The translations under genes were made by a program, and so were the position numbers. This document shows positions 11,426 through 64,000 of a stretch of DNA of 64,000 nucleotides, piece by piece. Position 1 is the first letter of the stretch. Every line of letters starts with the position of its first letter. Under the pieces are notes generated by a model that did not search any database, was not told the DNA's origin, and saw nothing but the letters and a program-made list of their open reading frames with translations. The stretch comes from Schmidtea nova (Eukaryota), in the NCBI GenBank assembly GCA_044892505.1, contig CM097882.1, forward strand, positions 2,170,001-2,234,000, read 5' to 3'.

Positions 11426-12527
11426 CTGCGGCCTTCCGAAAGTCTCAGTCAGTCAGTTATTTACATATTGCAGTTTACGATGAACGTCTACAGTGTAAAT
11501 ATGAACAACAATGGAAACAAAGGTCACAAACACCTTCAACATGTTACATGCTGCATGCACAGACGCAATCCCACACACACATATATATTGTGACTATTCA
11601 CACCAGACACACAACAGTGATAACAATGAGTCATGTTAATGAAGGATTGTCATTTTCTTAGAATATGGTTACTCGGAGAGAGCTTACAGACTTTCAGAAA
11701 GGCATTATTTACGGATGTTACCTTTGTGGAAAAAGTCAAAGTGAAAATGCTGCATTGATTGGCCATCCCAAAGGAACTATTAACTACTTCCTGAAGCAAA
11801 GAGCAGACACCGCCAGGAGCAGACACATATTAACAAGCAACGTTCAGGCTGCTCTAAACTCTTTTCAAATCTGATGGACAGCAATTCTGCTGGAGTCGTG
11901 TCGGAGAACGATTTCACCCTAACTGCATTCAGCCAACTGTGAAAAATGGAGGATGCTCCTTCATGTTTTGAAGTATTTTCTCAGCTCGTGGAACTGACTC
12001 TCTAGTGAAGTGCAGTAATCACATGACGTCAGTGGAATACCATGCCATTCTGGAAAATGAGCTTGTTCCCTTTCTCCCACAAATTGTGAGGATCATTTTC
12101 CAACAGGATAATGCACCAATCCATACTTCGCACATTATGAAGAAATTCTTTTTGCAGCACAACATTAACGTTTTGGATTGTGTTCCACAAAGCCGTGATC
12201 TGAATCTTTTTGATTTTATGTGGGACGTCATTGGTACACGGGTTCGCAAAAAGATTCCCATTGCCAATAACGCTTCGGAATTGGAAACGCATCTGCATGA
12301 GGAATGGTCACACATCTCCCCTGATTTTTATGCAAAATTGGTCGAAACAATACCTAACGAGTGCGCCTTGTAATCCAGATGAAAGGTAATATAACGAAGT
12401 ACTAACTCTCTCAGCGCTACAGACATTCTCTATTCGTGTGTGTTTGTGACATTTGTTCCCATTGCTGTTCATTATAAACTCCAATATGTAAATAACTGTC
12501 TGACTGGAGACTTTTGATAGGCCGGGG
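11426..12527 (+). mobile_element. Tc1/mariner element, internally deleted transposase pseudogene
   Basis: ~50-bp imperfect TIRs with TA on both sides; N-terminal RELTDFQKGII and QQDNAPIH motifs. Confidence 0.85.
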
Positions 12528-15940: not shown

Positions 15941-15942
15941 AA

Positions 15943-16949: not shown

Positions 16950-17054
16950 CAGGGGTGTCCATCTTTTCAGATTCCCTGTGCCTCATTAAAAAAAACGAGT
17001 TATATTGTGCCACATAAAATATACTAACCGTAAAGATAGCTGATGAACAAAAAA
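16950..17054 (+). mobile_element. MER30-like hAT end (copy 2)
   Basis: Duplicate of 468-572. Confidence 0.65.
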
Positions 17055-18110: not shown

Positions 18111-19670
18111 AGTAGGTAGATGTGTGGAGCCGGGAACAAATACATTGCGTGGGTGGCGTGGGTGTGAAAAAAGGCAAACAATTTGAACACATCAGAAACT
18201 GTATATTATTTGAATTTATTGTTTAGTTTTTCATGGTTTCATAATAAATCCTAATTGTGACTTTAAAAAGCTATATTTTAGAATAATAAAAACTGTATAC
18301 CTACTTTTGGACCAGCCTGTATTTTGAATAATAATTTTTTATTAACGCAAACAAAGAATCAGATTTCTAGTACAACTTTAATGTAAATTCCTGTACCCTT
18401 TCAGTAGGTAGATGTGTGGAGCCGAAAACAGAGACCTTATCACTCATTGCGTGGTCGGGAAAAAAGAACAAAGACATATTCCCTCCTCCCCCACCGGAGG
18501 AGGGGGTAGGAATTTTTTTCATGACTCATCGATGACTCATTATCTTTTGTGAAAAATTTTCTATCTTTTTAAAATTTTTTAAAAATTTTCTTTATTCTTT
18601 TTTTAACTTTTTTAAACTTTTTTTTGAAAAATTTACTCTTTTTTTATAATTTTTTTAATCTTTTTTTAGAATATTTTATTTTCGAAATATTTTCGATCTT
18701 TTTTAAAAATTTTTTTAATCTATTATTTTCGAAAAATTTTCTGTTTTTAAAATTTTTTTTATTTTACCAAACGATGACTCATCAAAAATTTTATGACTGA
18801 TCGAAAAATAATCAATTTTTCCCAACTTCTTCAATTTTCATTATTTTGAAACTTTTTTTGGTTTTTATGACTCATCGATGACTCAGCTATTTTTGAGAAG
18901 TTATTTTTTAAAATTTTTTACAAATTAAAAAATATTTAAATTGATGACTCATACTTATGTCTCATCGATGACTCACCCAATGATGCATTGATGACTCATT
19001 TCAAATTTGAATTTTATCACGTCATCAATGACGCATTTCAAATTAAAATTTTTAAAAATTTTAAAAGTACAAGTATCAAAGTCAAATTTGGTATCGTTCT
19101 CAAGGCATTTGCCAGACGCACATAGTTGTATTAATTTTGAAGGTGTCTGATCAAAAAATAAAATTTTGAAAAAAAGAGAAAAAAACTTAAAGTACCAAGG
19201 TTAAAATTGGTATCATTCTCAAGGCATTTGCCAAACGCACAATGTGGTATTATTTTTGAAGTTGTCTGATCGAAAAATAAAATTTTGTACCAAAAATTAA
19301 AAATTTTAAAAGTTTCAAGTACCAAGGTCAAATTTGGTATCATTCTAACCACCTTCGCTATTTGAACACGATGCTATATAATTTCATACCCTTTTTTAAA
19401 CAACGACATAGTTAACAAAGACATTTCAATGCCAAAAATACTTTAACAAAGACATTTCAATGCCAAAAAACTTAACAAAGATATTTCATTGGTTAAATAA
19501 TTAAACACAGACATTTCAATACCAAAATAACTAAACAAAGACATTTCAATATTCGTGCATTGTAAGCAATCATGATTAACAAACACATTGCAATACATAT
19601 GCAAGTTAACAAAGACATTACAATGCAGTTGCAAGCCAAATTAACAAATACATACATGCAAGATTAATTT
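18111..19670 (+). mobile_element. Two AGTAGGTAG termini (18111, 18403) and Polinton-derived fragment (copy 2)
   Basis: Duplicate of 1629-3190. Confidence 0.55.
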
Positions 19671-26087: not shown

Positions 26088-26509
26088 CAGGGCCGGATTA
26101 ACCCATTCTGGGTCCCTAGACATCTTCTTCTTATTGGGTCCCCTCCCTCTCCCAAAAAAATATAAAATAATAGATGAAACAAAATAAAATAATGTGAAAA
26201 ACTAAAACAAATCTTAAATTTTTAATTATAAAAAATATTTAATATACAACAATAAATTTGAAATTTTCTAGAAAAGATTGAACAGTTTATTTATAAATTT
26301 TAAAAAATTGAAATTTTTTTTAAATGTCTAACAAAAGTAAATATATAAATAATAATAAACTTTATTTAAAAATTCGGTTTTCTAGTCCTTAATTCATCAT
26401 AATTAATATTATCCAATTTGGAGAATGATAGACTCTATGAAAACCTATCTTTTCAAAATAGACAGTTTGACGGGGCCCAGGCATTTGTCTATGTTATGAC
26501 CCGGCCCTG
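26088..26509. mobile_element. hAT-type MITE (copy 2)
   Basis: Duplicate of 9612-10033. Confidence 0.75.
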
Positions 26510-26609
26510 GCAGATACATATGACGGAAAAACGTATATAACGCGGCGATAAACGTGCTATAAAATAAAATTAAATAATGTTAAAAAATAAAAAACTTAAA
26601 TTTTTATTA

Positions 26610-26694
<85 letters not shown>

Positions 26695-26771
26695 TAATCA
26701 TAATCATAATTATCTTATTGTTTGACCTTTGATCTTTTTAAATATTAAAATCAATAATTCCAATAATGGTA

Positions 26772-26909
26772 AGACTATAGATCAAAATTTCTTTAAATAA
26801 GTACACAATATTTCGGCACAGCCTTTATCAAGTGTGTATTAATACACACTTGATAAAGGCTGTGCCGAAATATTGTGTACTTATTTAAAGAAATTTTGAT
26901 CTATAGTCT
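26772..26909. repeat. 138-bp hammerhead-like palindrome (copy 2)
   Basis: Duplicate of 10302-10439. Confidence 0.85.
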
Positions 26910-26929
26910 CACTATTACGGGAATTATTG

Positions 26930-27014
<85 letters not shown>

Positions 27015-28029
27015 CATTAGTTTAATTACTCAATACCGAAAATGGGAAATAGAATCAAGTGACTTGTGATAATAGTAGAAATAACAGCGAAATATCTAAA
27101 CACGATAAAACCTAAATGATATTATTAAAATTACAAAAATCTAGTCTCAATTGGAAGGCTTGAAAGGTTCCTCGGATTTGGGAAAGATATAAAAATACAA
27201 ACTAAACTGTTTGTAAAACATTTTCGTCTATCATTTGATTTCATGTCACCAACACAATCTTTATCATTAGCTTTTAATTCACTGTTGAGACAAAACTGCC
27301 ATGCAGAACTTTTGACACTCTTAAAATTAATTTTTTAGATAAAAAATATTTATTCAAAAAATAAATTTTAAAATTAGGAAAAATTTCATTATAAATTTTA
27401 ATTTCAGTCGACCAGACGGATCATTCCTCAGTTTCCTGAATCCATTAAACACGATTAAATACTTTATCAAATATCGGTTGAAATGGATTTTGATCAAGAT
27501 TTTCGTGATTTTTATGGCTGTTTTAATTATTGCACTTTTCATTTACAATTTCCCCGGAAGTATTTCCAATTCAATTGTTACAAAAATGTTTGGATAGATA
27601 TTTTTATGGAGCTTGATTTCTCCCCTCATAATGAGATGAATTATTGTCCATTTCTGATGACTTTCCCATTTTATAACGAATTATATAAATATTCTTCTTT
27701 ATAGCTAAATGAATTTCAAATAATAATAATAATTAATATAATTTTATATATTATAATTTTACTATATATTTCGACAGACATCCTGTCATCTTTAGGTAAA
27801 AGTCATATAGAAAATACTGTTATTTCAATTTAGACAAACAAATTATAAAATATTATTAAATCAATTTTAAATATTATTTTAATCTTTTATACTGCGGCCT
27901 TCCAAAAGTCTCAGTCAGTCAGTTATTTACATATTGCAGTTTACGATGAACGTCTACAGTGTAAATATGAACAACAATGGAAACAAAGGTCACAAACACC
28001 TTCAACATGTTACATGCTGCATGCACAGA

Positions 28030-29094
28030 AGTAGGCAGTTATGTGGAGCATGAGTCATCGCAGAACAAAGGAAATGACGTCATTTTTATGACTCATCGAT
28101 GACGTCATCGATGACTCATCGCAATGACTCATCGGCATGACTCATCGATGACGTCATCGATGGCTCATCGCGATGACTCATCGGTATGACTCATCGATGA
28201 CGTCATCGATGACTCATTTCAAATTTGAATTTTATGACGTCATCGATGACTCATTTCAAATTCAAATTTTGAATTTGAATTTCCAAAGGTCAAATAAGGT
28301 CAAACCTTCAAACAAGGGTATCATTCGAAAGGTCTTTGAGAGGTGCACACAATGGTCATACCCTCGAGGGTCTATGGTGTGTCCTTAACCTTCAAAGGGT
28401 CAAAAACCTTCAGATTTTTCAAACCTTGTGTGTAATACATCATTCGAAAGGTAATACCGATGTGCACACAATGGTCATACCTTCGAAGGTGTATGGTGTG
28501 TGCTCAACCTTCAAGGGGTCAAAATCCTTCAAATATTTTTAAACATTACAAGTTATATATCAAACAAAAGGTAATTGAGATTTGAGTATGATGGTCAACC
28601 CTCGAAGGTGGGTGGTCGACCCTTGAAGGGTCCAAGACTCAAAATTTTAAAAACTATATAATATATGTATCAAACAAAAGGTAATTGAAGGGTGCACACA
28701 ATGGTCATACCCTTAAAGGTTCCAAGGTTCAAATTTTTAAAACTATATAATATGTATATCAAACAAAAGGTAATTGTGAGATGAGTGTGTGTGTGTTACA
28801 ATTTGCCAGAAGAGTGTGTGTTACAAATCCTTATTCAAACCTTATAATATACATATCATTCGAAAGGTAATTATGGTGTGTGTGTGTGTGTTATAATTTT
28901 TTCTATTTCCTACCTGAATTACATCAAAGACATTGCAATCCATGTGCAACGAAACAAAGACTAATAAAACTTGTAATAATAATTTTTGCAAACGTATCTT
29001 AGTGTTTAATAAGGATCACAGTTCTTCTCCTCTTGTTGTTTAAGACAAATAACAGTACGCATTGAACGCGCGTGGAACGCGCGTTCTTCTTCTC
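28030..29094 (+). repeat. Left TIR with TGACTCA/TGACGTCA array and internal short repeats
   Basis: Reverse complement of 36303-37359; inner end runs into an N gap. Confidence 0.95.
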
Positions 29095-29649
29095 NNNNNN
29101 NNNNNNNNNNNNNNNNNNNNNNNNNNNNNNNNNNNNNNNNNNNNNNNNNNNNNNNNNNNNNNNNNNNNNNNNNNNNNNNNNNNNNNNNNNNNNNNNNNNN
29201 NNNNNNNNNNNNNNNNNNNNNNNNNNNNNNNNNTATTACGTTAGTGGTAATTGCCAGATGTTTAAAAAACTCCAACATTAGAAAAAGTATCAAGCAAGTT
29301 AACCTTATTCCAAAAAAAAAAAAAAAAACATATTTATATACATGATAAGGTTTTTTCTCTTCAAACTTTTGAATATTTTATAATTTCATTGGAAGATCAG
29401 AAAACTCAAAAAATAAAATATGGTCTGAAATAATATATGAATTAACTCTATTAATTTCGTCTCTTCATATTTTAAAATAGCCACAATATTATATATTCTC
29501 AATAGCTTTACTATAAATAATTTATTTATAAATATTCAAAACGTTTTCCCGTTATTTACTTAATTTTTATTATTCAATAATTACTACAATAATAATAAAA
29601 AATTAAATCGGATGATAAAAGTCAAAAACTCTTAAAATAATTTATTTCA

Positions 29650-30003
29650 TTAAAATTCTTTAGCTTCTCGCATTTGATTCATCAATTGTTCATTTTCAAT
29701 TTTCAATTTTAGTATTTCTAAATTCTTTCTGCGAAGCTTCAGTATCATTCTTTCCTTTGATTCCCGGTAGAGATTGATCATTTTCTCTAGTTCCTCCATT
29801 CGACTCTTAATGTGAACCTTTGAACCATTGACCTTTGGAATTTCATGACTTTTTCCTAATAAATGTAATAATAATAATAATAAATTTAGAAAAATAAGTA
29901 TAATTTTACTTGAACTTTTAGAACTTTCAGGTAGCGAACTTCCATGTACCGAGATTGATTCATTCTCTGCGTTATTATTATTGCTAGTTTGTTGAGTGTT
30001 CAT
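29650..30003 (-). CDS. Small coiled-coil protein; 117 aa unspliced or 99 aa if intron 29856-29909 is removed
   Basis: ATG-TAA ORF; central AT-only 54-nt stretch begins GTAAAA and ends TTAG; TATA-like sequence upstream. Confidence 0.55.
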   Translation of the reverse strand: MNTQQTSNNNNAENESISVHGSSLPESSKSSSKIILIFLNLLLLLLHLLGKSHEIPKVNGSKVHIKSRMEELEKMINLYRESKERMILKLRRKNLEILKLKIENEQLMNQMREAKEF

Positions 30004-30509
30004 TGTTTAAAATGAATTACTTATAAAATTCTAATAGATATATACCAACTTTTATTACGTTGTGGTACTTTAAAAATATTTTACGTTGTGGTATATTTAA
30101 TTTTAAAGTTTGATTTAGAACTATAACATGAATTTTGAAAATCCGCTTTGTTTTTGCAAGAAATTGACTCTAAAAACTATGATTCAATATGTACAGTTTG
30201 ATTAAAATACAACTTTTTTAACTTATTAGACAAATCCATTGAATATTTCCTTGAATCAATTTATAGTTTTATACACTTCTACGGAGGAAATAATGTTTTA
30301 TCATTTTACAACCATTTTGTATCATCACAAAGTATCCAAAATCATTGCTTAATAAATACAGGAATTGTCAATATCTTTACTATTTTGTATTAAATTTACT
30401 CTGAAAATAATTAAATTATGTAAAAATGATTAATATTTAAGGAAAATGAAAGAAAATATACATGTTCTTGAATATCACAAGTGAATGACACAAGAAATAC
30501 AAGTGTAAT

Positions 30510-30615
30510 TAAGTTGCAATACAAATGCAATCAAGTTGCAATACAAATGCAATCAAGTTGCAATACAAATGCAATCAAGTTGCAATACAAATGCAATCAA
30601 GTTGCAATACAAGTG
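30510..30615. repeat. 22-bp tandem repeat (CAATCAAGTTGCAATACAAATG)n
   Basis: About 4-5 adjacent copies. Confidence 0.85.
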
Positions 30616-30699
30616 CATGACACATGCATAACATGACAGTACAAGTGTTTCAAACATGCGTCACAGTGATTTATATCAACAATTCAGACTTGAAATATG

Positions 30700-33400
30700 A
30701 TAAGTAGTCGAACGTTTCTATCAGAACCCTAGTAGCAGAACCTTGCTAACAGAACACTAGTAGCAGAACATCTTTTGTGATGGTTTTTATCTGCAAAAGC
30801 TTATTACTCGAACATTTATTTAATTATTACTGTTACAATTCAACTTCATTCAACATTAATTGTTCTAATATTCTCACCCATTAATATTTTCTACATTGCT
30901 TTTAAAATATCTATTGGATTTTCTCACTTTAAAGTAGAACCTACTGTAATGTTTGAAAGATTTATTTTCACTCATAATTCATTATTGTTATATTTTCATC
31001 AATTTTATTCAGTAGCAGAACATTGCTAACAGACCATTGCTAGCAGAACCTTTAGTAACAGAACATCTTTTGTGATGGTTTTTATGTGCAAAAGTTTATT
31101 ATTCACACATATACTAAAATAACAATCATTAGCTTAATCATATGAGCTTCGATCAATGTAACAAACTAATTGTGAAAGCATATTACATTTACTGATACAC
31201 TTTTAATGACAATTATTATGTACATATTTCTTGTTTGATGAATTTCTATGTATTTTGATGAATTTTAATATATTTTTGATATTGTGTGGGTATATTCTTG
31301 TAATTGCACTATAGAAGGATGATATTTCATGTATGTAATGATATTTCATGATGATATATTATGTATTTAATGATACTTTGTGATGACATTTCATATATAT
31401 TTCATATTTTGTATGTATTTCTAATATTTTTGCACTATAATGTGATAATATTTTGTGTATGTTTCTATTTTTGATATTTTGTACGTGTGTCATGAATATC
31501 TATGTATTTTGTGATGACATTTCATATGACTTATTTTTAATATTTTGTGTGTATATTTTTGATGATTTCTATATATTTTCTTTCTCAATGTTATCAAACT
31601 AGTAAGATAATATTTGATGTATCTAATGTCACTTTGTGAATATTTTCATGTATTTTCGCTATAGTATGATGACATTTCATGCATTCGATCTCATTTTAAA
31701 GTAGAATTTACTGTAATGTTTGAAAGATTTATTTCCATTCATATAACTTTCATTAATTTTATACAGTAGCAGAACATTGCTAACAGAACATTGCTATCAG
31801 AACCCTAGAAGCATAACATCTTTTGTGATGGTTTTCATGTGCAAAAGCTCATTACTTGAACATTTATTACTGTTACATTATAGATTTATGATATATGTGA
31901 TTATATTTTGTATGTGTAATGAACTTTTGATATTTTGTATATGATGATTTTCTAAGTATGTGTATATGATTTTCTTTGTGTATGTAGATATTTCTTTAAT
32001 GATTATTGTTGTGAATTTGATTAATTTCTGTATATTTTTTGATGATTATCTATGTAATTGCACTATAGTGTGATGATATATTGTGATGATATCCTTTGTA
32101 TGATGCATTCTTTGAAATTATGTATGTATTTTACACTAGTATGATAATATTTCATTCATTTGACTGACTATAACATGACAACTTTTCATGTGTATGATAC
32201 CCTTTGTGTGTGTGTATATGATATAACTTTTAATATTATGTGTATTTGCATTATAACATGAAGATATTTCTTGTCCGTATTTGCATTAAAGCATGATGAC
32301 ATTTTATGTATGTAAAGATATTTCACATGTGTAATGATATCCTTTGTGTATAGGATTTATTTCTATGTACTTTTGATATTTTCTATGAAGATATTTCATG
32401 TATGTGATAATTATAGTTTATCTATGTAATGATACTTGTACGTATTTTGATGATTTTCTATGTATTTTTATGTTATCAAACAATAATATGATAATCTTTT
32501 GTTTGTATTTTTAATATTTTCTTTGTGAATCTTGGATATTTTGTGATGACATTTCATATATTTTGTATGTATTTCTAATGTTTTTACACTATAATGTGAT
32601 AATACTTTGTGTATATGCTTTTAATTTTGACATTTTATTTGTATTTTGCATTATGGTACAATAATAATATTTCGTACATCTGATAAGCTTTTGTGTATAT
32701 ATTTCCACTAGTGTGATAATATTTCTTTTTATGATTATTATTGTCTGTATTTCTAGTATTTATGATAAACTTTGTATATAATTTGTGTGTATGATGATTT
32801 TTTGTGATGAAATTTCATGTATCGGATGATATTTCATGTATATAACGTTACTTTGTGATAATATTTCATGTAATGATATTTTGTGTGTATTTTGCATTAT
32901 AGTATGATAATATTTTGTGCATGTGATAATCTTTTGTGTAGTAATATTTCATGTGTGTGTGATGAATTTCTATATATTTTGTGTGTATGATTCTCAATAG
33001 TACGTAGATATTTCTTTCATGTGATAACCTTTTGTGTAATAATATTTCATATATGTAATGTTATTTTATATGTGTGTGTGATGAATTTATATGTATTTTA
33101 GATATTTTGTGTGTATTTTTAATGATTTTCTATGTTATTAAACTATGTTATTAAACTGTAGTATGATGACATTTTGTATGTAGTTTGCATAATAGTATAA
33201 TAATATTTGATGTATTTAAAGATACTTTGTTCTGATATTTCATGTATATATATATTTCATATATTTTTGATATATTTGTACTCTAGTATAAAAATAATTT
33301 GTGTAATGATCTGTATAGTATGATAATTTGTCATGTATTTACCTGCTCAGTGTGATGATATTCATATTATTAGTCTAAATTAATAGTGTGTTTACGAACC
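30700..33400. repeat. Strand-skewed T/G/A-rich degenerate repeat region
   Basis: Recurrent TGATGATATTTCATGTATG-like words, C-poor on + strand; recurring AGTAGCAGAACATTGCT blocks; homologous to 62068-64000. Confidence 0.75.
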
Positions 33401-33783
33401 TGAAAATATTTCCAGCTTTGAGATATATAAAATATAACCACATGTGTGTTAGTATATTTGCAAGTGGTAAAGTAGTTGTATTAGGTTTAAAAACTAGGGA
33501 TTATTTAAATATAGTTGATAATATTATTATCGATATAAAATAAATTATCGAAGATAAAGCCTTTGTTGATTTTATAATAACATGTGACTCATGATTGCAA
33601 TAAATCTGCAATATTAATGCACTATTCTGATTGGTCCAATGTATATTTCGATAATAAATACATGTTATGCATACTCGAATCTGATTGGTTCAGTGTGTAA
33701 TATTTTGTACATGCATTGTGTTTCTATCGTATATATATATATACAATTAACATTTTGCTATCATTTATATTCACAATCACAAA

Positions 33784-34494
33784 ATGCCCGAGATAATGAA
33801 ATATGGTAAATTTTAAAGTTTAATATTTTTTCATTTTTATAATTTTTTCATTTTAGAGAAATTACTTTCCGTACTTTACGGTAAACTTGAGGAAATCTAT
33901 CCGATGCTGATGCCGAAGCTGACCTATGCAGCACCGGAGCTCTTTCCCTACAAAATTCAATGCCTGACTGGGATCGATATTCATCAGGTCTTACTGGATC
34001 ATCTGGCTAATCGGGACAGTGAAATGCCATATATGGCGGAGCACATCTTGTGCGCATACCAATGCGGCCATTGTATGGACCGTATACAGAAGTATCGGGT
34101 CTGGATGTTACGAAACGCCCTCCACCAATTTGAAATGGATTCCAAGAAATTGGAAAAAATTGACGAGGAGGACGAGATTCCAAAGCAATGGCCAAATTCA
34201 ACACCCGAAGCGTCGGATGATGAAAAATCGCCAGATTGGGATAAATCGCATGATTGCGATAAATCGCCAGATTGCGATAAATCGCATGATTGCGATAAAT
34301 CGCATGATTGCGATAAATCGCATGATTGCGATAATTCACCTGATCATTTAGATGAATTGCCAGAATTACAATTATCTTTTGGTTGTTGGACTCCTATGGA
34401 TCAATCCGACGAAAACAAATGTATTGAATCGCCTCAATCGCCTGATTGCAATCAATGCCATCGCAAGCTTTCAAATATAGAGATTGCAGAATAA
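33784..34494 (+). CDS. Spliced 219-aa protein of unknown function with (DKSHDC)-type repeats; exons 33784-33805 and 33857-34494
   Basis: 51-nt GT..AG intron joins MPEIMKY in frame to the 33904 ORF; upstream ATTGG boxes and TATA-like run; AATAAA overlaps the stop. Confidence 0.7.
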
Positions 34495-35071
34495 ACATTA
34501 TAAATGTTATATGTTTTTATTTATTTGTGTATTTTCTTTTTATGTAGACACATTTTATGTATTCACATTTTATTATTTAATAAATCTTTTATTATTGTTA
34601 TTTTAGTTTTTTCTGTTTCAGTTTCTTATTTTGTTAATGAGTTATTTATTCGGTTTTTAAATAAATTTTTTAAATAATTTTAAAATAATTTTTAATTAGT
34701 TTTTTGAAATGAAATAGGTTTACTAGTAATTTTTATTAAGTTTTAAATAAGTTTTATTTAAATGAATTATGTTTAATAGTAAGTTTTATAAATAAAGACA
34801 ATTTCAATAATAAATACATATGCATCAATTAATTACAACAAAGTCATGTATTATATAACCAGTTTCAACAAAATAAACATACATGTATAATTAACACACG
34901 ACAAAGACATGCAACAAAGACATACCTGCAACAACGACATGCTTGCAACAAAGACATGTATGAAGACATGCATAACATGTGCAGTTAGAATGCGTCATTT
35001 TGATTGGGCAAAGGTATTACTCATCATTATAAATACAAAGACATTTAGTAGAGATTGTCACAATTTCAAAA

Positions 35072-35488
35072 ATGCCAGCACGTAAATCAACTTATGATAT
35101 CAGTGAAGAAAGAAAAATCAATAATGAATTGAAACCAGTGCAAATGTATTACGATTACAAAATTTATTTCTTGGTACAAGAAATACCGTTTCGTTTGTCG
35201 TATCCAGTGAAATTAACAAAGTCATTGTATGACAATTTAGCTGCAAATCTATGTAAAGAAGATGTTGTTGCACTAAATAAAATTTTATTTAAAATTAATA
35301 ACAATTTAAGTTGCAAGGAAACTATATGGATCAACAACCGAAAAACACGTTTCCATGATGCGTTTCAATCTATCGATTACAAGGATCAAGAAAATTGGTT
35401 TATTACCATAATCATTCAGGGATATAAAATCGATACAAAAGATGTTATAACTCCGATTTGGAGAATTGACAGTGCACGATATGCATAA
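35072..35488 (+). CDS. 138-aa protein of unknown function
   Basis: ATG-TAA ORF of globular composition; ATTGG and TATAAATA ~40-70 nt upstream. Confidence 0.65.
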   Translation: MPARKSTYDISEERKINNELKPVQMYYDYKIYFLVQEIPFRLSYPVKLTKSLYDNLAANLCKEDVVALNKILFKINNNLSCKETIWINNRKTRFHDAFQSIDYKDQENWFITIIIQGYKIDTKDVITPIWRIDSARYA

Positions 35489-36302
35489 TTGTTATTTTGT
35501 AAATGTTATATTCAATAAAATTTAGTAATTTCAATTTCAATTTTTGATTGTTTGAATTTTTATANNNNNNNNNNNNNNNNNNNNNNNNNNNNNNNNNNNN
35601 NNNNNNNNNNNNNNNNNNNNNNNNNNNNNNNNNNNNNNNNNNNNNNNNNNNNNNNNNNNNNNNNNNNNNNNNNNNNNNNNNNNNNNNNNNNNNNNNNNNN
35701 NNNNNNNNNNNNNNNNNNNNNNNNNNNNNNNNNNNNNNNNNNNNNNNNNNNNNNNNNNNNNNNNNNNNNNNNNNNNNNNNNNNNNNNNNNNNNNNNNNNN
35801 NNNNNNNNNNNNNNNNNNNNNNNNNNNNNNNNNNNNNNNNNNNNNNNNNNNNNNNNNNNNNNNNNNNNNNNNNNNNNNNNNNNNNNNNNNNNNNNNNNNN
35901 NNNNNNNNNNNNNNNNNNNNNNNNNNNNNNNNNNNNNNNNNNNNNNNNNNNNNNNNNNNNNNNNNNNNNNNNNNNNNNNNNNNNNNNNNNNNNNNNNNNN
36001 NNNNNNNNNNNNNNNNNNNNNNNNNNNNNNNNNNNNNNNNNNNNNNNNNNNNNNNNNNNNNNNNNNNNNNNNNNNNNNNNNNNNNNNNNNNNNNNNNNNN
36101 NNNNNNNNNNNNNNNNNNNNNNNNNNNNNNNNNNNNNNNNNNNNNNNNNNNNNNNNNNNNNNNNNNNNNNNNNNNNNNNNNNNNNNNNNNNNNNNNNNNN
36201 NNNNNNNNNNNNNNNNNNNNNNNNNNNNNNNNNNNNNNNNNNNNNNNNNNNNNNNNNNNNNNNNNNNNNNNNNNNNNNNNNNNNNNNNNNNNNNNNNNNN
36301 NN

Positions 36303-37359
36303 GAGAAGAAGAACGCGCGTTCCACGCGCGTTCAATGCGTACTGTGATCCTTATTAAACACTAAGATTCGTGTGCAAAAATTATTATTACAAGTTTTATT
36401 AGTCTTTGTTTCGTTGCACATGGATTGCAATGTCTTTGTTGTAATTCAGGTAGGAAATAGAAAAAATTATAACACACACACACACACACCATAATTACCT
36501 TTCGAATGATATGTATATTATAAGGTTTGAATAAGGATTTGTAACACACACTCTTCTGGCAAATTGTAACACACACACACTCATCTCACAATTACCTTTT
36601 GTTTGATATACATATTATATAGTTTTAAAAATTTGAACCTTGGAACCTTTAAGGGTATGACCATTGTGTGCACCCTTCAATTACCTTTTGTTTGATACAT
36701 ATATTATATAGTTTTTAAAATTTTGAGTCTTGGACCCTTCAAGGGTCGACCACCCACCTTCGAGGGTTGACCATCATACTCAAATCTCAATTACCTTTTG
36801 TTTGATATATAACTTGTAATGTTTAAAAATATTTGAAGGATTTTGACCCCTTGAAGGTTGAGCACACACCATACACCTTCGAAGGTATGACCATTGTGTG
36901 CACATCGGTATTACCTTTCGAATGATGTATTACACACAAGGTTTGAAAAATCTGAAGGTTTTTGACCCTTTGAAGGTTAAGGACACACCATAGACCCTCG
37001 AGGGTATGACCATTGTGTGCACCTCTCAAAGACCTTTCGAATGATACCCTTGTTTGAAGGTTTGACCTTATTTGACCTTTGGAAATTCAAATTCAAAATT
37101 TGAATTTGAAATGAGTCATCGATGACGTCATAAAATTCAAATTTGAAATGAGTCATCGATGACGTCATCGATGAGTCATACCGATGAGTCATCGCGATGA
37201 GCCATCGATGACGTCATCGATTAGTCATGCCGATGAGTCATTGCGATGAGTCATCGATGACGTCATCGACGAGTCATAAAAATTTTTTTCTCACCCCCCC
37301 GGGGGGTGACGTCATTTCCTTTGTTCTGCGATGACTCATGCTCCACATAACTGCCTACT
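36303..37359 (-). repeat. Right TIR of the 9.3-kb element
   Basis: Reverse complement of 28030-29094 with two small indels. Confidence 0.95.
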
Positions 37360-38367
37360 CACAGACGCAATCACACACACATATATATAATGTGACTATT
37401 TACACCAGACACACAACAGTGATAACAATGAGTCATGTTAATGAAGGATTGTCATTTTCTTAGAATATGGTTACTCGAAGAGAGCTTACAGACTTTCAGA
37501 AAGGCATTATTTACGGATGTTACCTTTGTGGAAAAAGTCAAAGTGAAAATGCTACATTTATTGGCCATCCCAAAGGAACTATTAACTACTTCCTGAAGCA
37601 AAGAGCAGACACCGCCAGGAGCAGACACATATTAACAAGCAACGTTCAGGCTGCCCTAAACTCTTTTCAAATCTGATGAACAGCAATTCTGCTGGAGTCG
37701 TGTCGGAGAACGATTTCACCCTAACTGCATTCAGCCAACTGTGAAAAATGGAGGATGCTCCTTCATGTTTTGAAGCATTTTCTCAGCTCGTGGAACTGAC
37801 TCTCTAGTCAAGTGCAGCAATCACATGACGTCAGTGGAATACCATGCCATTCTGGAAAATGAGCTTGTTCCCTTTCTCCCACAAATTGTGAGGCTCATTT
37901 TCCAACAGGATAATGCACCAATCCATACTTCGCACATTATGAAGAAATTCTTTTTGCAGCACAACATTAACGTTTTGGATTGTGTTCCACAAAGCCGTGC
38001 TCTGAATCTTTTTGATTTTATGTGGGACGTCATTGGTACACGGTTTCGCAAAAAGATTCCATTTGCCAATAACGCCTCGGAATTGGAAACGCATCTGCAT
38101 GAGGAATGGTCACACATCTCCCATGATTTTTATGCAAAATTGGTCGAAACAATGCCTAAACGAGTGCGCCTTGTAATCCAGATGAAAGGTAATATAACGA
38201 AGTACTAACTCTCTCAGCCCTACAGACATTCTCTATTCGTGTGTGTTTGTGACATTTGTTCCCATTGCTGTTCATTATAAACTCCAATATGTAAATAACT
38301 GTCTGACTGGAGACTTTTGATAGGCCGGGGTACATTAAAAAATCAATTTAAAAATTATTTTTATTAA

Positions 38368-40295
38368 CCCATTAAGGACCACTGGCATATTTTGAGATCA
38401 CTTTAAAACCCTATGAGTGTTCTATGAAATAATGAATATTTTTTACTTTAATCAGCTTTTATTTATTGATCAACAATAATTTTTATTTTTTAACCTTGAA
38501 AGTAAATTTTTATTTCATGATTTGACTTTGTTTTACAATGCTAAAGTTGGCCATTTTATGAAAAAACTGTGTTGTTCTTTGCAAGTAAGATCTATCAGAA
38601 ATTATTTAAAATAATAAAAACCCGAAAACATTTACGATCATAGAATATTATCAGTGTAATAAACATATGAAACATGAGTAGTTTTGTTAAATGGTATTTC
38701 CATAGCGCTAAAGCTGTGTGATCTCGTTTGAGATCACTGGTCCTCTGCATGAATAATTTTAATCTAGTGGCATATTTTGAGATCACTTCAAAACCATTTG
38801 AGTGTTCTATGAAATAATAAATATTTTTAACTAGAAACAGCTTCTACTTATTAATGAACAATATTTTTAGCTTTTACACCTTGACACTAAGGTAAAGTGA
38901 CCTAAAGTGACCTAAATACTATGCCCCGAGCACAGTTCATGCAAATAAAGAAGCATCTCCACTTCAATAATAACGCAAAGCTCTCACAATCGTCGAAACG
39001 AAATTTCAAAGTCAAACCTTTGTACGACATTTTGAATAAAAACTTTCTACAGTTTCAATTTATGCACGAAATGTTGTCTGTGGATGAGCAAATTGTGAAA
39101 TACTACATCCCCTGAAGCAATTTATTGCTAACAAACCAATTCGACTTGGCCTGAAAAATTGGCTTTTGTGCAGCTCATCAGGATATTGATATCAATTCAA
39201 TAATTATTGTGGGAAAGATGGTAGGAAAAAGACTAACGTCCCTCTTGGTCTGAAAGTAGTGCTACATTTTGCAAAGCTGCTTACCGAACATGCACAACAT
39301 ATTCTGTTCTTTGATAATTTCTTTTCATCTTATCCATTATTTGTTCAATTAAAAGAAAAGATTATGCCAGCTATTGGGTCATGTAGAGAAAACAGACTAA
39401 TGAAGTGTCCACTGAAAACGGAGAAGGAGTTAAACCAAGCCAGACGTGGCAGTGTCGACTTTCAGTTTGATGAAAGGAACCAAATCCAGGTTGTGAAATG
39501 GATGGACAATAAAGCAGTTGTTATTTCTTCACATTTTTGTTCTGCAAATATTGACGGAACAGTTGTACGCTGAAAAAAACGAGAAGGCTCGGTTGACGTT
39601 CCCATACCAGCTTTGATTCGACACTTCAACCAAGGAATGGGTGGTGTGGATTTGACAGACAATGCAGTGAACTGTTACAAAATATCTATCACTTCTAAAA
39701 AATGGTATTGGTCACTTGTAATGAATGCTCTATAAATGTGTGTCACAAATGCTTGGCATTTACACAACATGGTACATGGTAATAAGACTCCACTTCTGAA
39801 TTTTACCAGAGCTATAGCCATGGCATACAATATCAATCTGTGAAGAGAGGGGCACATCTACCAAGCAATTTTATACAGTGAGGTGAGAAATTCCTTTATG
39901 CATTAGAATATTGCCATGTTGTATGTGAATGACATTTGTTATTTTAGATATGATGGCAATCGTCACTTCATGGCCAGAAGAGAAGAGCAAAGACGATGTC
40001 AAGGCGAGAACTGCAGCAGTAGACCCCGATCCTACTGTAAAAAATGCAATGTAACTTTGTGTTAAACTTGTTTTGAAACTATCATGTTTTTTGAGTGAAA
40101 CATATATTTTTCACTTTCTACCCGTTTCCTACATATAAAGGACCACTGATCTCATTTGAGATCAGCAAGTTTGACCCACATAGGGTGAATAGAATTCGAT
40201 GAACTTTTGGTTTTCCATAGTCGATGAGAAACCTCATTAAAAGACATCAAGACATACAATGAATTAAACCCTAACTTATAACGGTTCTTAATGGG
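38368..40295 (+). mobile_element. piggyBac-like element (copy 2), transposase 5' part deleted
   Basis: Same TIRs and TTAA; ~0.7 kb shorter than copy 1. Confidence 0.9.
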
Positions 40296-40917: not shown

Positions 40918-41084
40918 AATAAATGTGTTAAATCATGATTTACAAAATTTTAGTAATTTTTATTTCCATAAATCATAAATCTCTGGATTAAATGGGAAAA
41001 GCGTGACTTAAAAATATTTGGAAAAAAATTAATAACGTTCACTGGTATATATAAGTGCTAATGAGACGGGACATTTATTCAGAA

Positions 41085-43246: not shown

Positions 43247-44069
43247 AGTAGGTAGATGTGTGGAGCCGGGAACAAAGACATTGTGTGGGTGGCTTGGGTG
43301 TGAAAAAAAGGAACAAAGACATACCCCCTCCATCTCCACCGGAAGGAGGGTATTTTTTACCAAATTTTTTTTTGGCGCCAAATTTTTTTTTCAAAATTTT
43401 TTTTCGCGATAAATTTTTTTTTCAAAATTTTTTTTCGCGCCAAATTTTTTTTCCACAAATTTTTTTCCACAAATTTTTTTTCCACAATTTTTTTTTACAT
43501 AAACTATTTTTTTCAAATTATTTTTTTGACAAATTTTATTACACATATTTTTTTACACGAATTTTTTTCAAAATTTTTTTATGACTCATCCTTATGACTC
43601 ACTATTATGACACATTGATGACTTACCCTTATGACTCGTCGTTGACTCACCAATATGACTCATCGATGACTCATCGATGACTCACCCTTGTGACTCACAC
43701 CATGACTCATTAAAAATTTTTAAAAAAGTCACGTCATTGATAACTCATTTCAATTTTAAATAATTTTTTTAAAATTTTAAAAGTACAAATATCAAGGTTA
43801 AATTTTGTGTCGTTCCCTAATCATAGAAGTGACGCACACAGTGCAATGACGCACACGATGGTTACATTTTTTAAGTTGGCCGATCGAAAAAATTAAATTT
43901 GGACCAAAAATTTAAAAAATTTCAAGTACCAATTGTATCATTCGAACCGCCACCGCTATATCAACACTATGATATATAATTTCATACCGGGGGGTATGTA
44001 TTTGTTCTTTTTTCACACCCACGCTACCCACGCAATGTCTTTGTTCCCGGCTCCACACATCTACCTACT
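43247..44069. mobile_element. 823-bp Polinton-type miniature element with ~80-bp TIRs
   Basis: AGTAGGTAGATGTGTGGAGCCGGGAACAAAGACATTG at both ends in inverted orientation; flanks GTAATC / CTTCTG do not form a TSD. Confidence 0.75.
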
Positions 44070-59846: not shown

Positions 59847-62067
59847 CTAATCTTTTGATTGGTCTATAAAAGAGTCACATACCTTATAATGCCCGTATGC
59901 AAGACTTTCATTTTTATCCACCCAAAGTCTTTTATTATCAAGAAAAGTCAAGGCAATTTTCGAATATTTATTAGTAAAGAGTTGATGATTCTTACTAACA
60001 ATTCTCGACTGATCAACAGAAACTATTGAATTATTATTGTAACAATCCAGATACGACTGATAATTCAGTTTAGTGTCCTTCAATGTTATACCCTTAGCCT
60101 TAATGCACTTTTCATCACCTAAAAGACTGTAACACTTTGGTCTAAGAAACAGCCACTCATCATACTTGAATCCTTTATTCTGGTCTTTGAATTTACCAAT
60201 GACGGAATCTAGGTTTTTCGAGTACAAGGTATGATTTGGGTCATAATTCGAAGTATCTAATAACCAATCCATAACCAAAGCAGACAAAAGAATATAAAAC
60301 TTACATTTCTTAACTTCCAAAAAAAAGAATCTGTATCACCAGTGATTATACCACTCTCACAGTTGAATTCATTACGATATTTTTGTAATTCTTCATACTG
60401 GAGTTGATACATCCTAAGTTTAGATAAATCCAGTACAGTTTGACCAATGTAGCTGGGTCAATCTAAACACACAGAGTCCTTATTAAGTAAGACAGAAACT
60501 AGGTCATCATCAATTTTATAAGATTTTCTAAAGGTAGGTTTTGAAGTATATGTAATCTGTTTTGATACTGAGTTGCATATTCATAAATTGAGTCGTTTCT
60601 TAAGATTTTCAACCGTTTTCCCATAAAGACTATTATTTAAAAGTTTGTAATAGTTTTTATCTAAAGCCGTAGAAGAAGCTGCCCTAAGTTCAGTGTTCGT
60701 ATCTATATATTCTTTAAAGATAGGTTTCTGTTTGTACTGAACGACCCGATGAACTCGAGTTATTTTAACACCCAAAGAAAGAAAAATCTCGAGAAGCCTC
60801 CAAAGAATAACATAGTTGAATTTTGGATAATGCGTAAGCATTAACTTCTCAACTTTTGAACCCGGAGCACACATTTTCTCTGCTGCAACCGGTAAATCAT
60901 TTAATTTATCGTAAATTTCTGAAGGGATTTCAAGATCCACTTCAAAAGTTACTCCATAAGATAAAATAGCCAAATCAGCATCCATTAATTTAATTAATTA
61001 ATTAAATTTATTTTGATCTGTGATCCAACTAAATTCACCATAAGGTAATGTTTGACTTAAAGCCCAACCGTATAAATTATTTATATCAATGTATAAAAGT
61101 TCAGTCATTTCGGAGGATACTACATGATGCTTGTTGACAAATGTCAAACCACCACGGATCCCCCCTTCGAAAAAATTATAAATCTCCATATCCTGGAGCA
61201 ACTCAATAGGTTCATCCAAGGTAATAAGCGCAGAAGCCCATGACATACCTGGAATCCCCAAGAAATTCAAAGGCTCAAGTCTATTGTGAGCTATAGATTT
61301 AGCCCTAAACTGTTGAAAGAAATCAACAAGAAGAAAAACATCCAGTTTAAGGTAGACTATCATATAGTCACAAAGAGTTTGACACTGGGATTCCCTCCAA
61401 ATCACCAATGCCTTGTCATATTCATCTTGTTTAACACCTTTCCAGATTGGTGGCAGCTCATAAGTGTTGTTAAGAATTTCTAAAGATGTGGCAAAATCAT
61501 AAGGAAAAATACCCTTACAATCAACAATAGTCCCGGTGAATTCAGATCTAGTCAAAGGCAAACAAGTAAGAGTCTTAACAGCATCATTTAAGCTAGAATT
61601 TACAAACTGACAAGAATCGATGAATTTATTGGTTAAACCACCGACTCTTGCAGATAAAGTTAAGAATTTTTCGCTAGTTGTAGGAATGCAAGAAATTTTC
61701 CAAGTCTTGAAATTAGCCAAACCATATTTAAGAAAATGGTGCAAGTCAAAGTCCTTTAAATTATGAAAAATAACGAGTAAAAACTTGTATAACAGACGGG
61801 ATTGATTACAAGAATTACATGCTGCACCCAAAAATTCACCAGTGTAGTGATCATGGTCTCTGACTGGTTGTACTAAAGTTTTCTTACAAAGATAACAAAT
61901 AGTAGTAGAAGCAAAAGATTGTTGATTAGCTGCTGTCATAAAAAGAGGTTTCTTGCAATTAGTTTTATAAAAGGGATAAACAATAGTTTCAGAAATATCA
62001 CTAATTTCAGAAAGAAACCTAGAAACACAATCAAGACCTAAAAAACTCTTGTAAATCTTTTCTCCAG
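59847..62067 (-). pseudogene. polB: Protein-primed family B DNA polymerase (Polinton/adintovirus type), frameshifted and 5'-truncated
   Basis: RDHDHYTG..AACNSCN, FHNL..FD, KGIFPY, YLKLDV, DINNLYGWA, KLLNNSLYGK, GDTDS, RPKCY, KAKGI; at least three lesions. Confidence 0.92.
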
Positions 62068-63002
62068 TTTTTATGTGCTAAAGCTCATTACTCACACATA
62101 CTACAATAAAAATCATTAGTATAATCCTTTATGAGCTTCAATCAATGTAACAGACAAATTGTGAAAGCCGATTACATTTACTGATACACTTTTAATGACA
62201 ATTATTATGTGAATATTTCTTTTTGATGAATTTCTATGTATGTTTGATGAATTTCAATGTATTTTTGATATTTTGTAGGTATTTTCTTGTAATTGTACTA
62301 TAGAATGATGATATTTCATGTATGTGATGATACTTTGTGATGATATATTATGTTTTTAATGATACCTTGTGATGACATTTCATATATATTTGATATTTCG
62401 TTTGTATTTCTAATGTTTTTGCACTATAATGTGATAATATTTTGTGTATGTTTGTATTTTTTATATTATGTACGTGTGATGAATTTGCACTAATGTGATA
62501 ATATTTTGTGTATGTTTGTATTTTTGATATTTTTTACGCATGTGATGAATTTCTATGTATTTTGTGATNNNNNNNNNNNNNNNNNNNNNNNNNNNNNNNN
62601 NNNNNNNNNNNNNNNNNNNNNNNNNNNNNNNNNNNNNNNNNNNNNNNNNNNNNNNNNNNNNNNNNNNNNNNNNNNNNNNNNNNNNNNNNNNNNNNNNNNN
62701 NNNNNNNNNNNNATAGTAAGATAATATTTGATGTATGTAATGTCACCTTTTGAGTATTTTCATGTATTTGCATTATAGTATGATAACATTTGACCTCATT
62801 TTAAAGTATACTTTGCTATAATTTTTGAAAGATTTATTTTCAGTCATAATTCATTGTTAAATTTTCATCAATTTTATTCAGAAGCAGAACATTGCTAACC
62901 GAACATTGCTAGCAGAACCCTAGTAGCAGAACATCTTTTGTGATGGTTTTTATGTGCTAAAGCTCATTAATTGAACATTTATTACTGGTACATTATAAAT
63001 AA

Positions 63003-63055
<53 letters not shown>

Positions 63056-63867
63056 ATTATATTTTGTATGTAATGAACCTTTGATATTTTGTATGTGATG
63101 ATTTTCTAAGTATCTGATTATATCCTTTGTGTATGTATGATAATATTTCATATATTTTTGATATTTTAGTATATTTTTTATGTAATTGCACTAGTATGTA
63201 TATATTTCTTTAATGCTTATTGTTCTGGGTTTGACGAATTTCTGTGTATTTTTGATGATTATCCATGTAATTGCACTATAGTATGATGATATATCGTGAT
63301 GATATCCTTTGTATGTATGATGCATATTTTGATATTATGTATGTATTTTACACTAGTATGATAATATTTCATGCATTTGACTGACTATAAAATGACAGCT
63401 TTTCATATATATGATATCGTTTGTGTGTATGATGTATTTTCTTTAATATTAAGTGTATTTGCATTATAGCATGATGATATTTTGTCTGTATTTGCATTAA
63501 AGTATGATGATATTTCATATATATAATGATATCCTTTCTGTATAGGATTTATTTATATGTATTTTTGATATTTTGTATGTAGATATTTCATGTATGTTAT
63601 AATCTTTTGTGTAATTATATTTCATGTCTATAATGATACATCTATGAATTTTAATAATTTTCTATGTATTTCTATCTATTTTTATGTTATCAAACAATAA
63701 TATGATAATCTTTTGTGTATTTTCTTTGTGAATCTGATAATTTATGATGATAATTCATATATTTTGTTTGTATTTATAATGTTTATGCACTATAATGTGA
63801 TAATATTTTGTTTGTATATTTTTATATATTTTTGTATTTTTTTCTTTTATTTTACATTATATATGTC

Positions 63868-63900
<33 letters not shown>

Positions 63901-64000
63901 TTGATATTTTGTGTTTTTTTGCACTATATTATAATAATAGTTCATGCATGTGATTATCGGTAATGATATTTCTTATATATGATATTTTGAATGTGTCATG
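62068..64000. repeat. Strand-skewed degenerate repeat homologous to ~31075-33000
   Basis: Collinear match from TTTTATGTGC(T/A)AAAG...AATCATTAG onward; roughly 85% by eye. Confidence 0.8.

What the first reader, a model, noticed from the sequence alone, without database searches (positions are those of the whole stretch)
28030..37359. Non-autonomous Polinton-like element carrying its own small, partly spliced genes
Seen: AG...CT ends, ~1.06-kb TIRs, exact 6-bp TSD, and an empty site in the paralogous Tc1. Known: this is the Polinton/Maverick integration signature. The sequenced part has no PolB, integrase, ATPase, protease or capsid. Instead it has three intact unrecognised genes with promoter-like motifs and ~50-nt introns, plus a 2.7-kb skewed repeat. 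Inference: a satellite-like derivative mobilised in trans by a helper Polinton while keeping expressed accessory genes. Near-identical TIRs indicate recent insertion. The ~0.9 kb of gaps is too small for the core genes if the gap sizes are right.
Basis: partly seen in the sequence, partly recalled or inferred. Interest (0 to 1): 0.82.

Follow-up and report, generated by a model that had tools for sequence, protein, structure and literature searches.

The report
Gene-poor Maverick-like transposon with orphan genes
A 9.3-kb mobile element with the end signature of virus-like Polinton/Maverick transposons has recently inserted into a Tc1 transposon; its read part holds none of the viral core genes and only two or three small orphan genes, so it is most likely an ordinary deletion derivative, although two assembly gaps leave that open.

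Summary
The element spans 28030-37359, with 5'-AGTAGG...CCTACT-3' ends. Its terminal inverted repeats are at least 1,057/1,065 nt, with 5 mismatches and 3 indels. The 6-bp target duplication CACAGA is exact, and a paralogous copy of the flank at 11558-11563 is an empty site.

Both N gaps begin at the same position of the two repeat arms. The 6.3-kb interior is therefore a separate contig joined only by scaffolding, and "non-autonomous" depends on the estimated gap sizes (877 nt in total).

The read interior has no PolB, integrase, ATPase, protease or recognisable capsid gene. ORFs b (33784-34494) and c (35072-35488) are longer than any ORF in 300 shuffles. Both have inverted-CCAAT plus TATA-like upstream motifs, and neither has a detectable relative. 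ORF a is weak. The introns are models only.

- The 2.6-kb skewed array has a 75-90% identical copy at 62067-63958, directly upstream of a broken Maverick-type PolB.
- Related termini occur six more times in the window, including an 823-bp MITE-like element.
- A TBP-like fragment lies at 33379-33540.

Verdict: probably a deletion derivative of a Polinton/Maverick family that kept its end-proximal cargo region. It is a new member of a known kind. Mobilisation in trans and expression are untested.

The parts
28024..28029 (.). Left copy of the 6-bp target site duplication CACAGA
28030..29094 (+). Left terminal inverted repeat, read part. It starts with the terminus AGTAGGCAG. About 12 ATGACTCATCG units follow (28050-28254), then 119-nt and 89-nt tandem repeats, then AACAAAGACAT-like motifs near the inner end. 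It stops at gap 1.
29095..29233 (.). Assembly gap 1 (139 N, size estimated). It starts at the same arm position as gap 2. Not filled and not looked up.
29650..30003 (-). ORF a, 117 codons. It has a low-complexity N-terminal part and a helical, coiled-coil-looking C-terminal part. A candidate in-frame 54-nt GT..AG intron lies at 29856-29909. Weakly supported as a gene.
30722..33305 (+). T/G-rich degenerate array of short repeats (units of about 14, 20 and 32 nt) with no long ORF. It is 75-90% identical to 62067-63958.
33379..33540 (+). TBP-like fragment. It is a 54-codon open stretch matching the C-terminal end of the second TBP repeat and ends at its own stop. No upstream TBP-coding part was found.
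33784..34494 (+). Gene b. The model has exon 1 at 33784-33805, a 51-nt intron at 33806-33856 and exon 2 at 33857-34494, giving 219 codons. Exon 2 is 42.5% G+C against 26% for the interior. It contains six 18-nt palindromic repeats at 34225-34334. Two TGATTGG motifs and a TATA-like run lie upstream. No relatives were found.
34837..35044 (+). Cluster of AACAAAGACAT-like motifs, one TGATTGG (35001) and TATAAATA, all upstream of gene c. The same motif occurs in the repeat arms and in the arms of the related family.
35072..35488 (+). Gene c, 138 codons, unspliced, with AATAAA 27 nt after the stop. No relatives were found.
35565..36302 (.). Assembly gap 2 (738 N, size estimated). Not filled and not looked up.
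36303..37359 (-). Right terminal inverted repeat, read part
37360..37365 (.). Right copy of the target site duplication CACAGA
11558..11563 (.). Empty site: a single CACAGA in the paralogous copy of the Tc1-like flank
59850..62077 (-). Broken protein-primed PolB with Endonuclease VII-like and DNA_pol_B_2 domains. It has 3 in-frame stops and at least 1 frame change. It aligns to residues 551-1339 of a 1,494-residue relative. It is the only PolB homology in the window.
62067..63958 (+). Second copy of the T/G-rich array, abutting the start of the PolB remnant. It runs towards the end of the window.
43247..44069 (+). 823-bp MITE-like element of a related family. Its terminus is AGTAGGTAGATGTGTGGAGC, with 82-nt inverted ends 92.7% alike. 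It is collinear with the arm at 18403. No matching target duplication.
18403..19653 (+). Left arm of the related family (paralog at 1921-3171). It has the same order of parts as the finding's arm: terminus, ATGACTCAT units, tandem repeats, AACAAAGACAT array.

Best explanation
The element is an internally deleted, non-autonomous member of a Polinton/Maverick family of this genome. It kept both long terminal inverted repeats and the cargo region next to one end, and lost the replication and capsid modules.

Shown:
- It inserted into a Tc1-like element with a 6-bp staggered-cut signature, after (or on only one copy of) a local duplication.
- Its ends, AGTAG...CTACT, are of the Maverick type.
- Its read interior lacks all core genes.
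- Its interior array recurs next to a Maverick-type PolB remnant about 25 kb away.

Inferred:
- An rve-type integrase supplied by an autonomous relative carried out the integration.
- A helper's protein-primed PolB acting on the repeat ends carried out any copying.
- The parent had the order left repeat - core genes - PolB (leftward) - array - TBP-like gene - b - c - right repeat, and a deletion removed everything from PolB leftward.
- Genes b and c are lineage-specific cargo genes with their own RNA polymerase II promoters (inverted CCAAT box plus TATA-like run).
- The ATGACTCATCG and AACAAAGACAT arrays in the arms are protein-binding sites of the family.
For: - Duplication, ends, repeats and empty site.
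- Published Maverick features: 6-bp duplication, repeats of 46-1,447 bp, AGT/AG end motifs, accessory regions (PMC8097293).
- No core genes in the interior.
- Array 30722-33305 matches 62067-63958, which starts where PolB homology ends (62071).
- The PolB remnant has Endonuclease_7 + DNA_pol_B_2, as reported for insect Maverick PolBs (PMC5803895).
- A family exists. Related termini occur 6 more times against 0 expected, and include a short MITE-like element and arms with the same architecture.
- Genes b and c exceed all 300 shuffles. Three of the window's seven TGATTGG sites lie 71-156 nt upstream of their ATGs. Gene b is G+C-rich and carries an intron model.
- A G+C-rich, intron-bearing cargo region of 2-5 kb next to a repeat is described for nematode Mavericks (bioRxiv 10.1101/2022.07.12.499685).
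Against: - Only one copy was seen.
- No autonomous element with the same ends was examined.
- The interior is a separate contig between two gaps of estimated size. It could belong to another copy, or the gaps could be larger than written.
- The array is low-complexity and could be a genomic satellite that lies near the PolB remnant by chance.
- The PolB remnant has no repeat arm within the window.
- The MITE-like relative has no target duplication.
- b and c have no relatives at all, so selection on them cannot be shown.
- Single-sequence structure models were useless (pLDDT 32.5 and 38.6).
Confidence: 0.58

Rival explanations
1. Assembly artefact. The locus holds a full-length or much longer Polinton/Maverick. 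The gaps are underestimated, or the interior contig was placed here through read pairs that map to repeat arms shared by several copies. The apparent lack of core genes is then not real.
For: Both gaps start at the same arm position, so the interior is joined only by scaffolding. The window has 8 gaps, and paralogous copies break at the same place. Related arms exist elsewhere in the window.
Against: The written gap sizes total 877 nt. The interior contig carries family motifs (AACAAAGACAT) and the PolB-linked array, so it belongs to this family even if not to this copy. A core set needs about 8 kb or more (own knowledge of gene sizes).
Confidence: 0.17
2. The element is a non-autonomous member of a different superfamily of inverted-repeat transposons that also makes 6-bp duplications (for example Ginger2, IS3EU or an undescribed one). 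The PolB remnant nearby is coincidental.
For: No Polinton protein lies inside the element. The window is crowded with other transposons: MULE, piggyBac-like, Tc1, and a weak H2C2 + rve integrase remnant at 45570-46181. A related arm at 18403 lies about 1 kb from a MULE gene.
Against: - Ginger2 ends are TGTNR and its target is RTATAY (PMC2836005). Here the ends are AGTAGG and the target is CACAGA.
- MULE, hAT, P and piggyBac make other duplication lengths (own knowledge).
- The AGTAG end is close to the published (AGT)2 Maverick motif.
- The array links the interior to a PolB gene.
Confidence: 0.13
3. The element is a Maverick derivative, but the ORFs are not working genes. They are decaying leftovers or chance ORFs in repeat-rich DNA, and the element is a passive shell.
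For: - No relatives for b or c in three kinds of search.
- A third of ORF b's second half is an 18-nt palindromic DNA repeat that is also open in other frames and on the other strand.
- ORF a is matched by 8 of 300 shuffles.
- The neighbouring TBP-like piece is clearly a fragment.
Against: The lengths of b and c exceed all shuffles. Inverted CCAAT motifs cluster upstream of both. Both have a TATA-like run and AATAAA at fitting distances.
Confidence: 0.35

Closest known systems
Polinton/Maverick self-synthesising, virus-like transposons
   Same: 6-bp target duplication, long terminal inverted repeats within the published range, and 5'-AG(T)...(A)CT-3' ends (PMC8097293). There is also a sequence link to a PolB of Maverick domain architecture.
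   Different: No PolB, integrase, ATPase, protease or capsid gene in the read 8.4 kb. At 9.3 kb it is shorter than intact vertebrate Mavericks (12.7-24.6 kb).
Cargo or accessory region of Mavericks (nematode Mavericks, bioRxiv 10.1101/2022.07.12.499685; 'acc.' genes of vertebrate Mavericks, PMC8097293)
   Same: Genes b and c lie next to a repeat arm. Gene b is G+C-richer than its surroundings and has an intron model. The genes have no viral function that can be recognised.
   Different: In those elements the cargo sits beside a complete core. Here only the cargo-like part remains, and the genes have no relatives at all.
Internally deleted non-autonomous DNA transposons and MITEs
   Same: The ends are kept and the enzymes are lost. 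A short (823 bp) relative is present in the same window.
   Different: Such derivatives are rarely reported for Polintons. The Anolis survey found an 'apparent absence of nonautonomous copies' (PMC3014272). Tlr1 was once proposed as a non-autonomous derivative, and that view was later contested (PMC4028283).
Ginger2/TDD transposons
   Same: 6-bp target duplication and an integrase-type mechanism
   Different: Ginger2 ends are TGTNR and its target is RTATAY (PMC2836005). Neither applies here.

Membership tests
Polinton/Maverick | Perfect 6-bp target site duplication | tested here: met
   CACAGA on both sides and once in the empty paralogous site
Polinton/Maverick | Long terminal inverted repeats (46-1,447 bp in intact vertebrate elements, PMC8097293) | tested here: met
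   At least 1,057/1,065 nt: 1,026 matches, 5 mismatches, 3 indels. The inner ends are unread.
Polinton/Maverick | 5'-AG...CT-3' ends of the (AGT)2//(ACT)2 or (AG)3//(CT)3 type | tested here: met
   The ends are AGTAGG...CCTACT, matching 5 of 6 positions of (AGT)2 at each end
Polinton/Maverick | [quoted passage not shown] | tested here: not met
   No Pfam hit in the interior ORFs. A tblastn with 57 relatives hit only 59871-62071, outside the element. The gaps are unread.
Polinton/Maverick | Retrovirus-like (rve) integrase inside the element | tested here: not met
   No rve hit among the 12 interior ORFs sent to Pfam. These were the long ORFs and some of the 40 open stretches of 45 codons or more; the rest were not scanned. 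The gaps are unread.
Polinton/Maverick | Capsid module (double and single jelly-roll proteins, packaging ATPase, maturation protease) | tested here: inconclusive
   No Pfam, PHROG or PDB-sequence hit for a, b or c. The structure models were too poor for a fold search. The ORFs are too short for a double jelly-roll protein.
Non-autonomous derivative mobilised in trans | An autonomous element with the same ends in the same genome | not tested
Within the window the PolB remnant has no repeat arm.
Non-autonomous derivative mobilised in trans | Several copies with the same interior and different target duplications | not tested
   There is one copy in the window and no paralogs of a, b or c
Ginger2 | TGTNR ends and an RTATAY 6-bp target (PMC2836005) | tested here: not met
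   The ends are AGTAGG and the target is CACAGA
TATA-box-binding protein family (for 33379-33540 only) | Two TBP repeats forming the saddle | tested here: not met
   Only positions 35-74 of 85 of one repeat are present (Pfam TBP 26.1 bits, cut-off 22.9; PDB TBPs at 6.5e-6). No further TBP-like coding was found.

The most novel reading that the evidence does not exclude
A satellite-like Maverick derivative that is still copied and moved with the help of an autonomous relative, while expressing its own orphan genes from CCAAT/TATA promoters. This would be a 'cargo-only' virus-like element, and its genes (one next to a TBP-derived piece) would act on transcription of the helper or the host.
Probability: 0.1. 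Interest if true: 0.65.

Novelty: new member of a known kind. Interest (0 to 1): 0.36.

Why it matters
If the gaps hide nothing, this is a clean, recently inserted example of a Polinton/Maverick shell that kept only its ends and its cargo region. Non-autonomous derivatives are poorly documented for this class. One with intact orphan genes would help to answer what the minimal cis requirements of these elements are, and where their cargo genes come from. At present it rests on a single copy in a gapped assembly, so it is a useful annotation rather than a discovery.

Tried and rejected
Searches for relatives of the ORFs, all empty:
- Exact look-ups of the window's own ORF c and of the first PolB ORF found nothing on record.
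- Word-based protein searches for c and b found no relatives.
- The exhaustive phmmer of b exon 2 against 1.84 billion representatives gave 0 hits.
- PDB sequence searches for b and c were empty, apart from one chance-level hit for b at E = 0.32. PHROGs was empty.

Structure. AlphaFold2 single-sequence models of c and b were unusable (pLDDT 32.5 and 38.6). No fold search was run on them.

Other checks:
- Rfam gave only sub-threshold miRNA-like hits on the palindromic arm repeats, and no tRNA was found.
- Alternative genetic codes were rejected. The ciliate code opens ORFs everywhere, and the standard code fits.
- ORF a as a bZIP protein binding the arm repeats was rejected, because Pfam gave no bZIP hit.
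- Ginger2, MULE, hAT and P were rejected on ends and duplication length (and own knowledge).
- The host organism could not be named. The closest PolB relatives (55-74% identity) are unnamed metagenome fragments, and the named ones are arthropods at 33-36%.
- Kapitonov and Jurka 2006 (PMC1450207) is not held.

Steps left out. The joined two-exon model of gene b was not searched. Exon 2 was searched by reference, and exon 1 (7 codons) is too short to search.
Full report
OBSERVATION

The window is AT-rich (29.8% G+C) and has eight N gaps.

Ends. An inverted-repeat search finds arms at 28082-29022 and 36341-37283 that are 98-99% complementary. Reading the sequence extends them outward to 28030 and 37359. 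The left junction is CACAGA|AGTAGGCAGTTATGTGGAGC and the right junction is the reverse complement followed by CACAGA. A global alignment of the read arms (1,065 and 1,057 nt) gives 1,026 matches, 5 mismatches and three indels of 24, 2 and 34 nt.

Empty site. A self-comparison shows that the window is a tandem segmental duplication:
- 1-5841 matches 16483-22323.
- 5997-11563 matches 22474-28029.
- 11558-13102 matches 37360-38905.
The 6-nt overlap at 11558-11563 is a single CACAGA with both flanks continuous, which is an exact empty site. The flank is a Tc1-like element (DDE_3 hits).

GAPS (tested first, as asked)

Both arms stop at the same repeat position. The same last ~30 nt precede the N run at 29095 and, on the other strand, at 36302. 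The only 'ORFs' across the gaps are runs of X. No gene model touches a gap: ORF c ends 76 nt before gap 2, and ORF a ends 416 nt after gap 1. The two ends of the interior contig (29234-35564) are not inverted repeats of each other and carry no arm sequence.

It follows that the true arm length is unknown (at least 1,057 nt) and that the arms end inside the gaps. The interior is attached only by scaffolding, and continuity is not shown.

INTERIOR

Core genes. Pfam scans of the ORFs found no polymerase, integrase, ATPase, protease or capsid domain. A tblastn with 57 PolB relatives hit the window only at 59871-62071.

ORFs. Three stand out.
- ORF b has 225 codons stop to stop, and ORF c has 151. 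Both exceed the longest ORF in all 300 shuffles of the interior (mean 83, maximum 128). ORF a (118 codons) is reached in 8 of 300 shuffles.
- Only ten ORFs of 150 codons or more exist in the whole window under the standard code. Eight belong to transposons; the other two are b and c.

Signals around gene b.
- Exon 2 is 42.5% G+C against 26% for the interior.
- A 51-nt GT..AG stretch (33806-33856) would join a 22-nt first exon starting at ATG 33784 in frame.
- Upstream lie two TGATTGG motifs (33628, 33682) and a TATA-like run.

Signals around gene c.
- One TGATTGG lies at 35001, TATAAATA about 35 nt before the ATG, and AATAAA 27 nt after the stop.
- TGATTGG occurs only seven times on both strands of the 64 kb. 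Three of these lie 71-156 nt upstream of the ATGs of b and c. From memory, this motif is an inverted CCAAT (Y) box.

ORF a has a candidate in-frame 54-nt GT..AG stretch. All introns are my own models. Exon 2 of b was searched by reference, and exon 1 is too short.

RELATIVES OF THE ORFS

- Gene c: no exact record, no word-search relatives, no PDB sequence hit, no PHROG.
- Gene b: no word-search relatives, and 0 hits at E <= 0.001 among 1.84 billion representatives. The PDB search gave only one chance-level hit at E = 0.32. There was no Pfam hit and no PHROG hit.
- The single-sequence structure models were useless, so no fold search was made.
- There are no paralogs of a, b or c in the window.
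- Part of ORF b (34225-34334) is six copies of an 18-nt palindromic DNA unit that is also open in other frames.

1. The skewed array. It spans 30722-33305 and its composition is T 47%, A 30%, G 14%, C 10% (measured over 30700-33330). It has a second copy, 75-90% identical, at 62067-63958. That copy begins exactly where homology to a protein-primed PolB ends (62071).

2. The PolB at 59850-62077 (minus strand).
- It carries Endonuclease_7 and DNA_pol_B_2 domains. This pairing is described for insect Maverick PolBs (PMC5803895).
- It is broken by 3 in-frame stops and at least one frame change. It aligns to residues 551-1339 of a 1,494-residue relative. Some of these apparent breaks could be short introns.
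- Its closest relatives (55-74% identity) are unnamed metagenome fragments. The named ones are arthropod proteins at 33-36%. The host is therefore probably an invertebrate, but it is not identified.

3. Related ends. The terminus AGTAGGTAGATGTGTGGAGC occurs six more times, against 0 expected.
- An 823-bp MITE-like element lies at 43247-44069, with 82-nt inverted ends and no matching duplication.
- Long arms lie at 1921 and 18403. They show the same order of parts as the finding's arm: terminus, ATGACTCATCG units, tandem repeats, AACAAAGACAT array.

4. A TBP-like fragment. A 54-codon open stretch at 33379-33540 matches the C-terminal part of a TBP repeat (Pfam 26.1 bits against a cut-off of 22.9; PDB TBPs at 6.5e-6). 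It is about 40% identical to canonical TBPs over 35 residues, and no upstream TBP-coding part exists.

INTERPRETATION

The insertion signature matches published Maverick features: perfect 6-bp duplications, repeats of 46-1,447 bp, and (AGT)2//(ACT)2 or (AG)3//(CT)3 ends (PMC8097293). It does not match Ginger2, which has TGTNR ends and an RTATAY target (PMC2836005).

The array links the interior to a PolB-bearing element. The layout on the right side is array, TBP-like piece, b, c, right arm. This resembles the G+C-rich, intron-bearing cargo region next to a repeat in nematode Mavericks (bioRxiv 10.1101/2022.07.12.499685).

The most economical reading is a deletion derivative that lost everything from PolB leftward and kept the cargo end. 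Integration by an rve-type integrase and copying by a helper's PolB are inferences from the family, not observations.

Recency is better supported by the empty paralogous site than by arm identity. The left flank is about 99.5% identical between the paralogs.

LIMITS

- Only one copy was seen.
- The assembly is gapped, and the 738-nt gap could hide one small gene.
- There are no expression data.
- No autonomous element with the same ends was examined.

Literature context. Non-autonomous Polinton derivatives are a known idea. Tlr1 was once so interpreted (PMC4028283), and the Anolis survey looked for non-autonomous copies and found none (PMC3014272).

SLIPS AND OMISSIONS

Every pattern I searched was copied from the window, and the TBP likeness was tested with the window's own ORF.
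- One search printed ORF bounds for the whole window, which include the open segments of the PolB remnant.
- Searches were exact look-ups with the window's own proteins, one of them the PolB piece. Both returned nothing.

VERDICT

The element is a new member of a known kind, of moderate interest.

Noticed in passing
window 59850-62077 (-): Broken protein-primed PolB with an Endonuclease VII-like N-terminal domain (Maverick-type architecture). It has 3 in-frame stops and at least 1 frame change, and no repeat arm nearby.
   Followed up: partly
window 62067-63958: Second copy of the T/G-rich array found inside the finding's element. It abuts the start of the PolB remnant and runs towards the end of the window.
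   Followed up: partly
window 43247-44069; 1921-3171; 18403-19653; 1629-1690; 18111-18172: A related family with terminus AGTAGGTAGATGTGTGGAGC. It comprises an 823-bp MITE-like element (no matching target duplication), two long paralogous arms and two 62-nt solo termini. How they came to be arranged this way is unexplained.
   Followed up: partly
window 33379-33540 (+): Fragment of a divergent TBP-like gene: the C-terminal part of one TBP repeat, ending at its own stop. It lies between the array and gene b. Its origin, host gene or element cargo, is unknown.
   Followed up: partly
window 28050-28254 and 37111-37339: Each arm carries about 12 ATGACTCATCG units that include TGACGTCA palindromes. 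From memory these cores equal AP-1/GCN4 and CRE sites; this was not tested. One TGACTCA also lies upstream of gene b (about 33585).
   Followed up: no
window 33628, 33682, 35001: Three of the window's seven TGATTGG motifs lie 71-156 nt upstream of the ATGs of genes b and c, each followed by a TATA-like run.
   Followed up: yes
window 10564-13102 versus 27030-28029 and 37360-38905: Identity between the paralogs steps at the insertion site. It is about 99.5% in the last 1 kb to the left (100% further left) and about 98% to the right. This could reflect gene conversion stopped by the insertion, two duplication events, or assembly.
   Followed up: partly
window 5849-5996 and 22324-22473: The two paralogous copies have an N gap at the same relative position (148 and 150 N), so the same sequence was hard to assemble in both.
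   Followed up: no
window 45570-46181 (+): Weak Integrase_H2C2 (E = 2.6e-4) and rve (E = 5.5e-5) hits in adjacent ORFs, both below the Pfam cut-offs. The zinc-finger type suggests a retroelement or Ginger-like integrase rather than a Maverick one.
   Followed up: partly
window 13681-14442 (+); 20053-21475 (-) and 3571-4993 (-); 15913-16752, 41055-41894, 54756-55595, 57601-58446: Other transposon remnants: a piggyBac-like transposase (DDE_Tnp_1_7), MULE transposase pieces in both paralogs, and a 279-codon ORF of unknown family repeated four times.
   Followed up: partly
window 34225-34334: Six copies of an 18-nt palindromic unit inside ORF b. They encode a DKSHDC-like repeat and keep other frames and the opposite strand open.
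   Followed up: no
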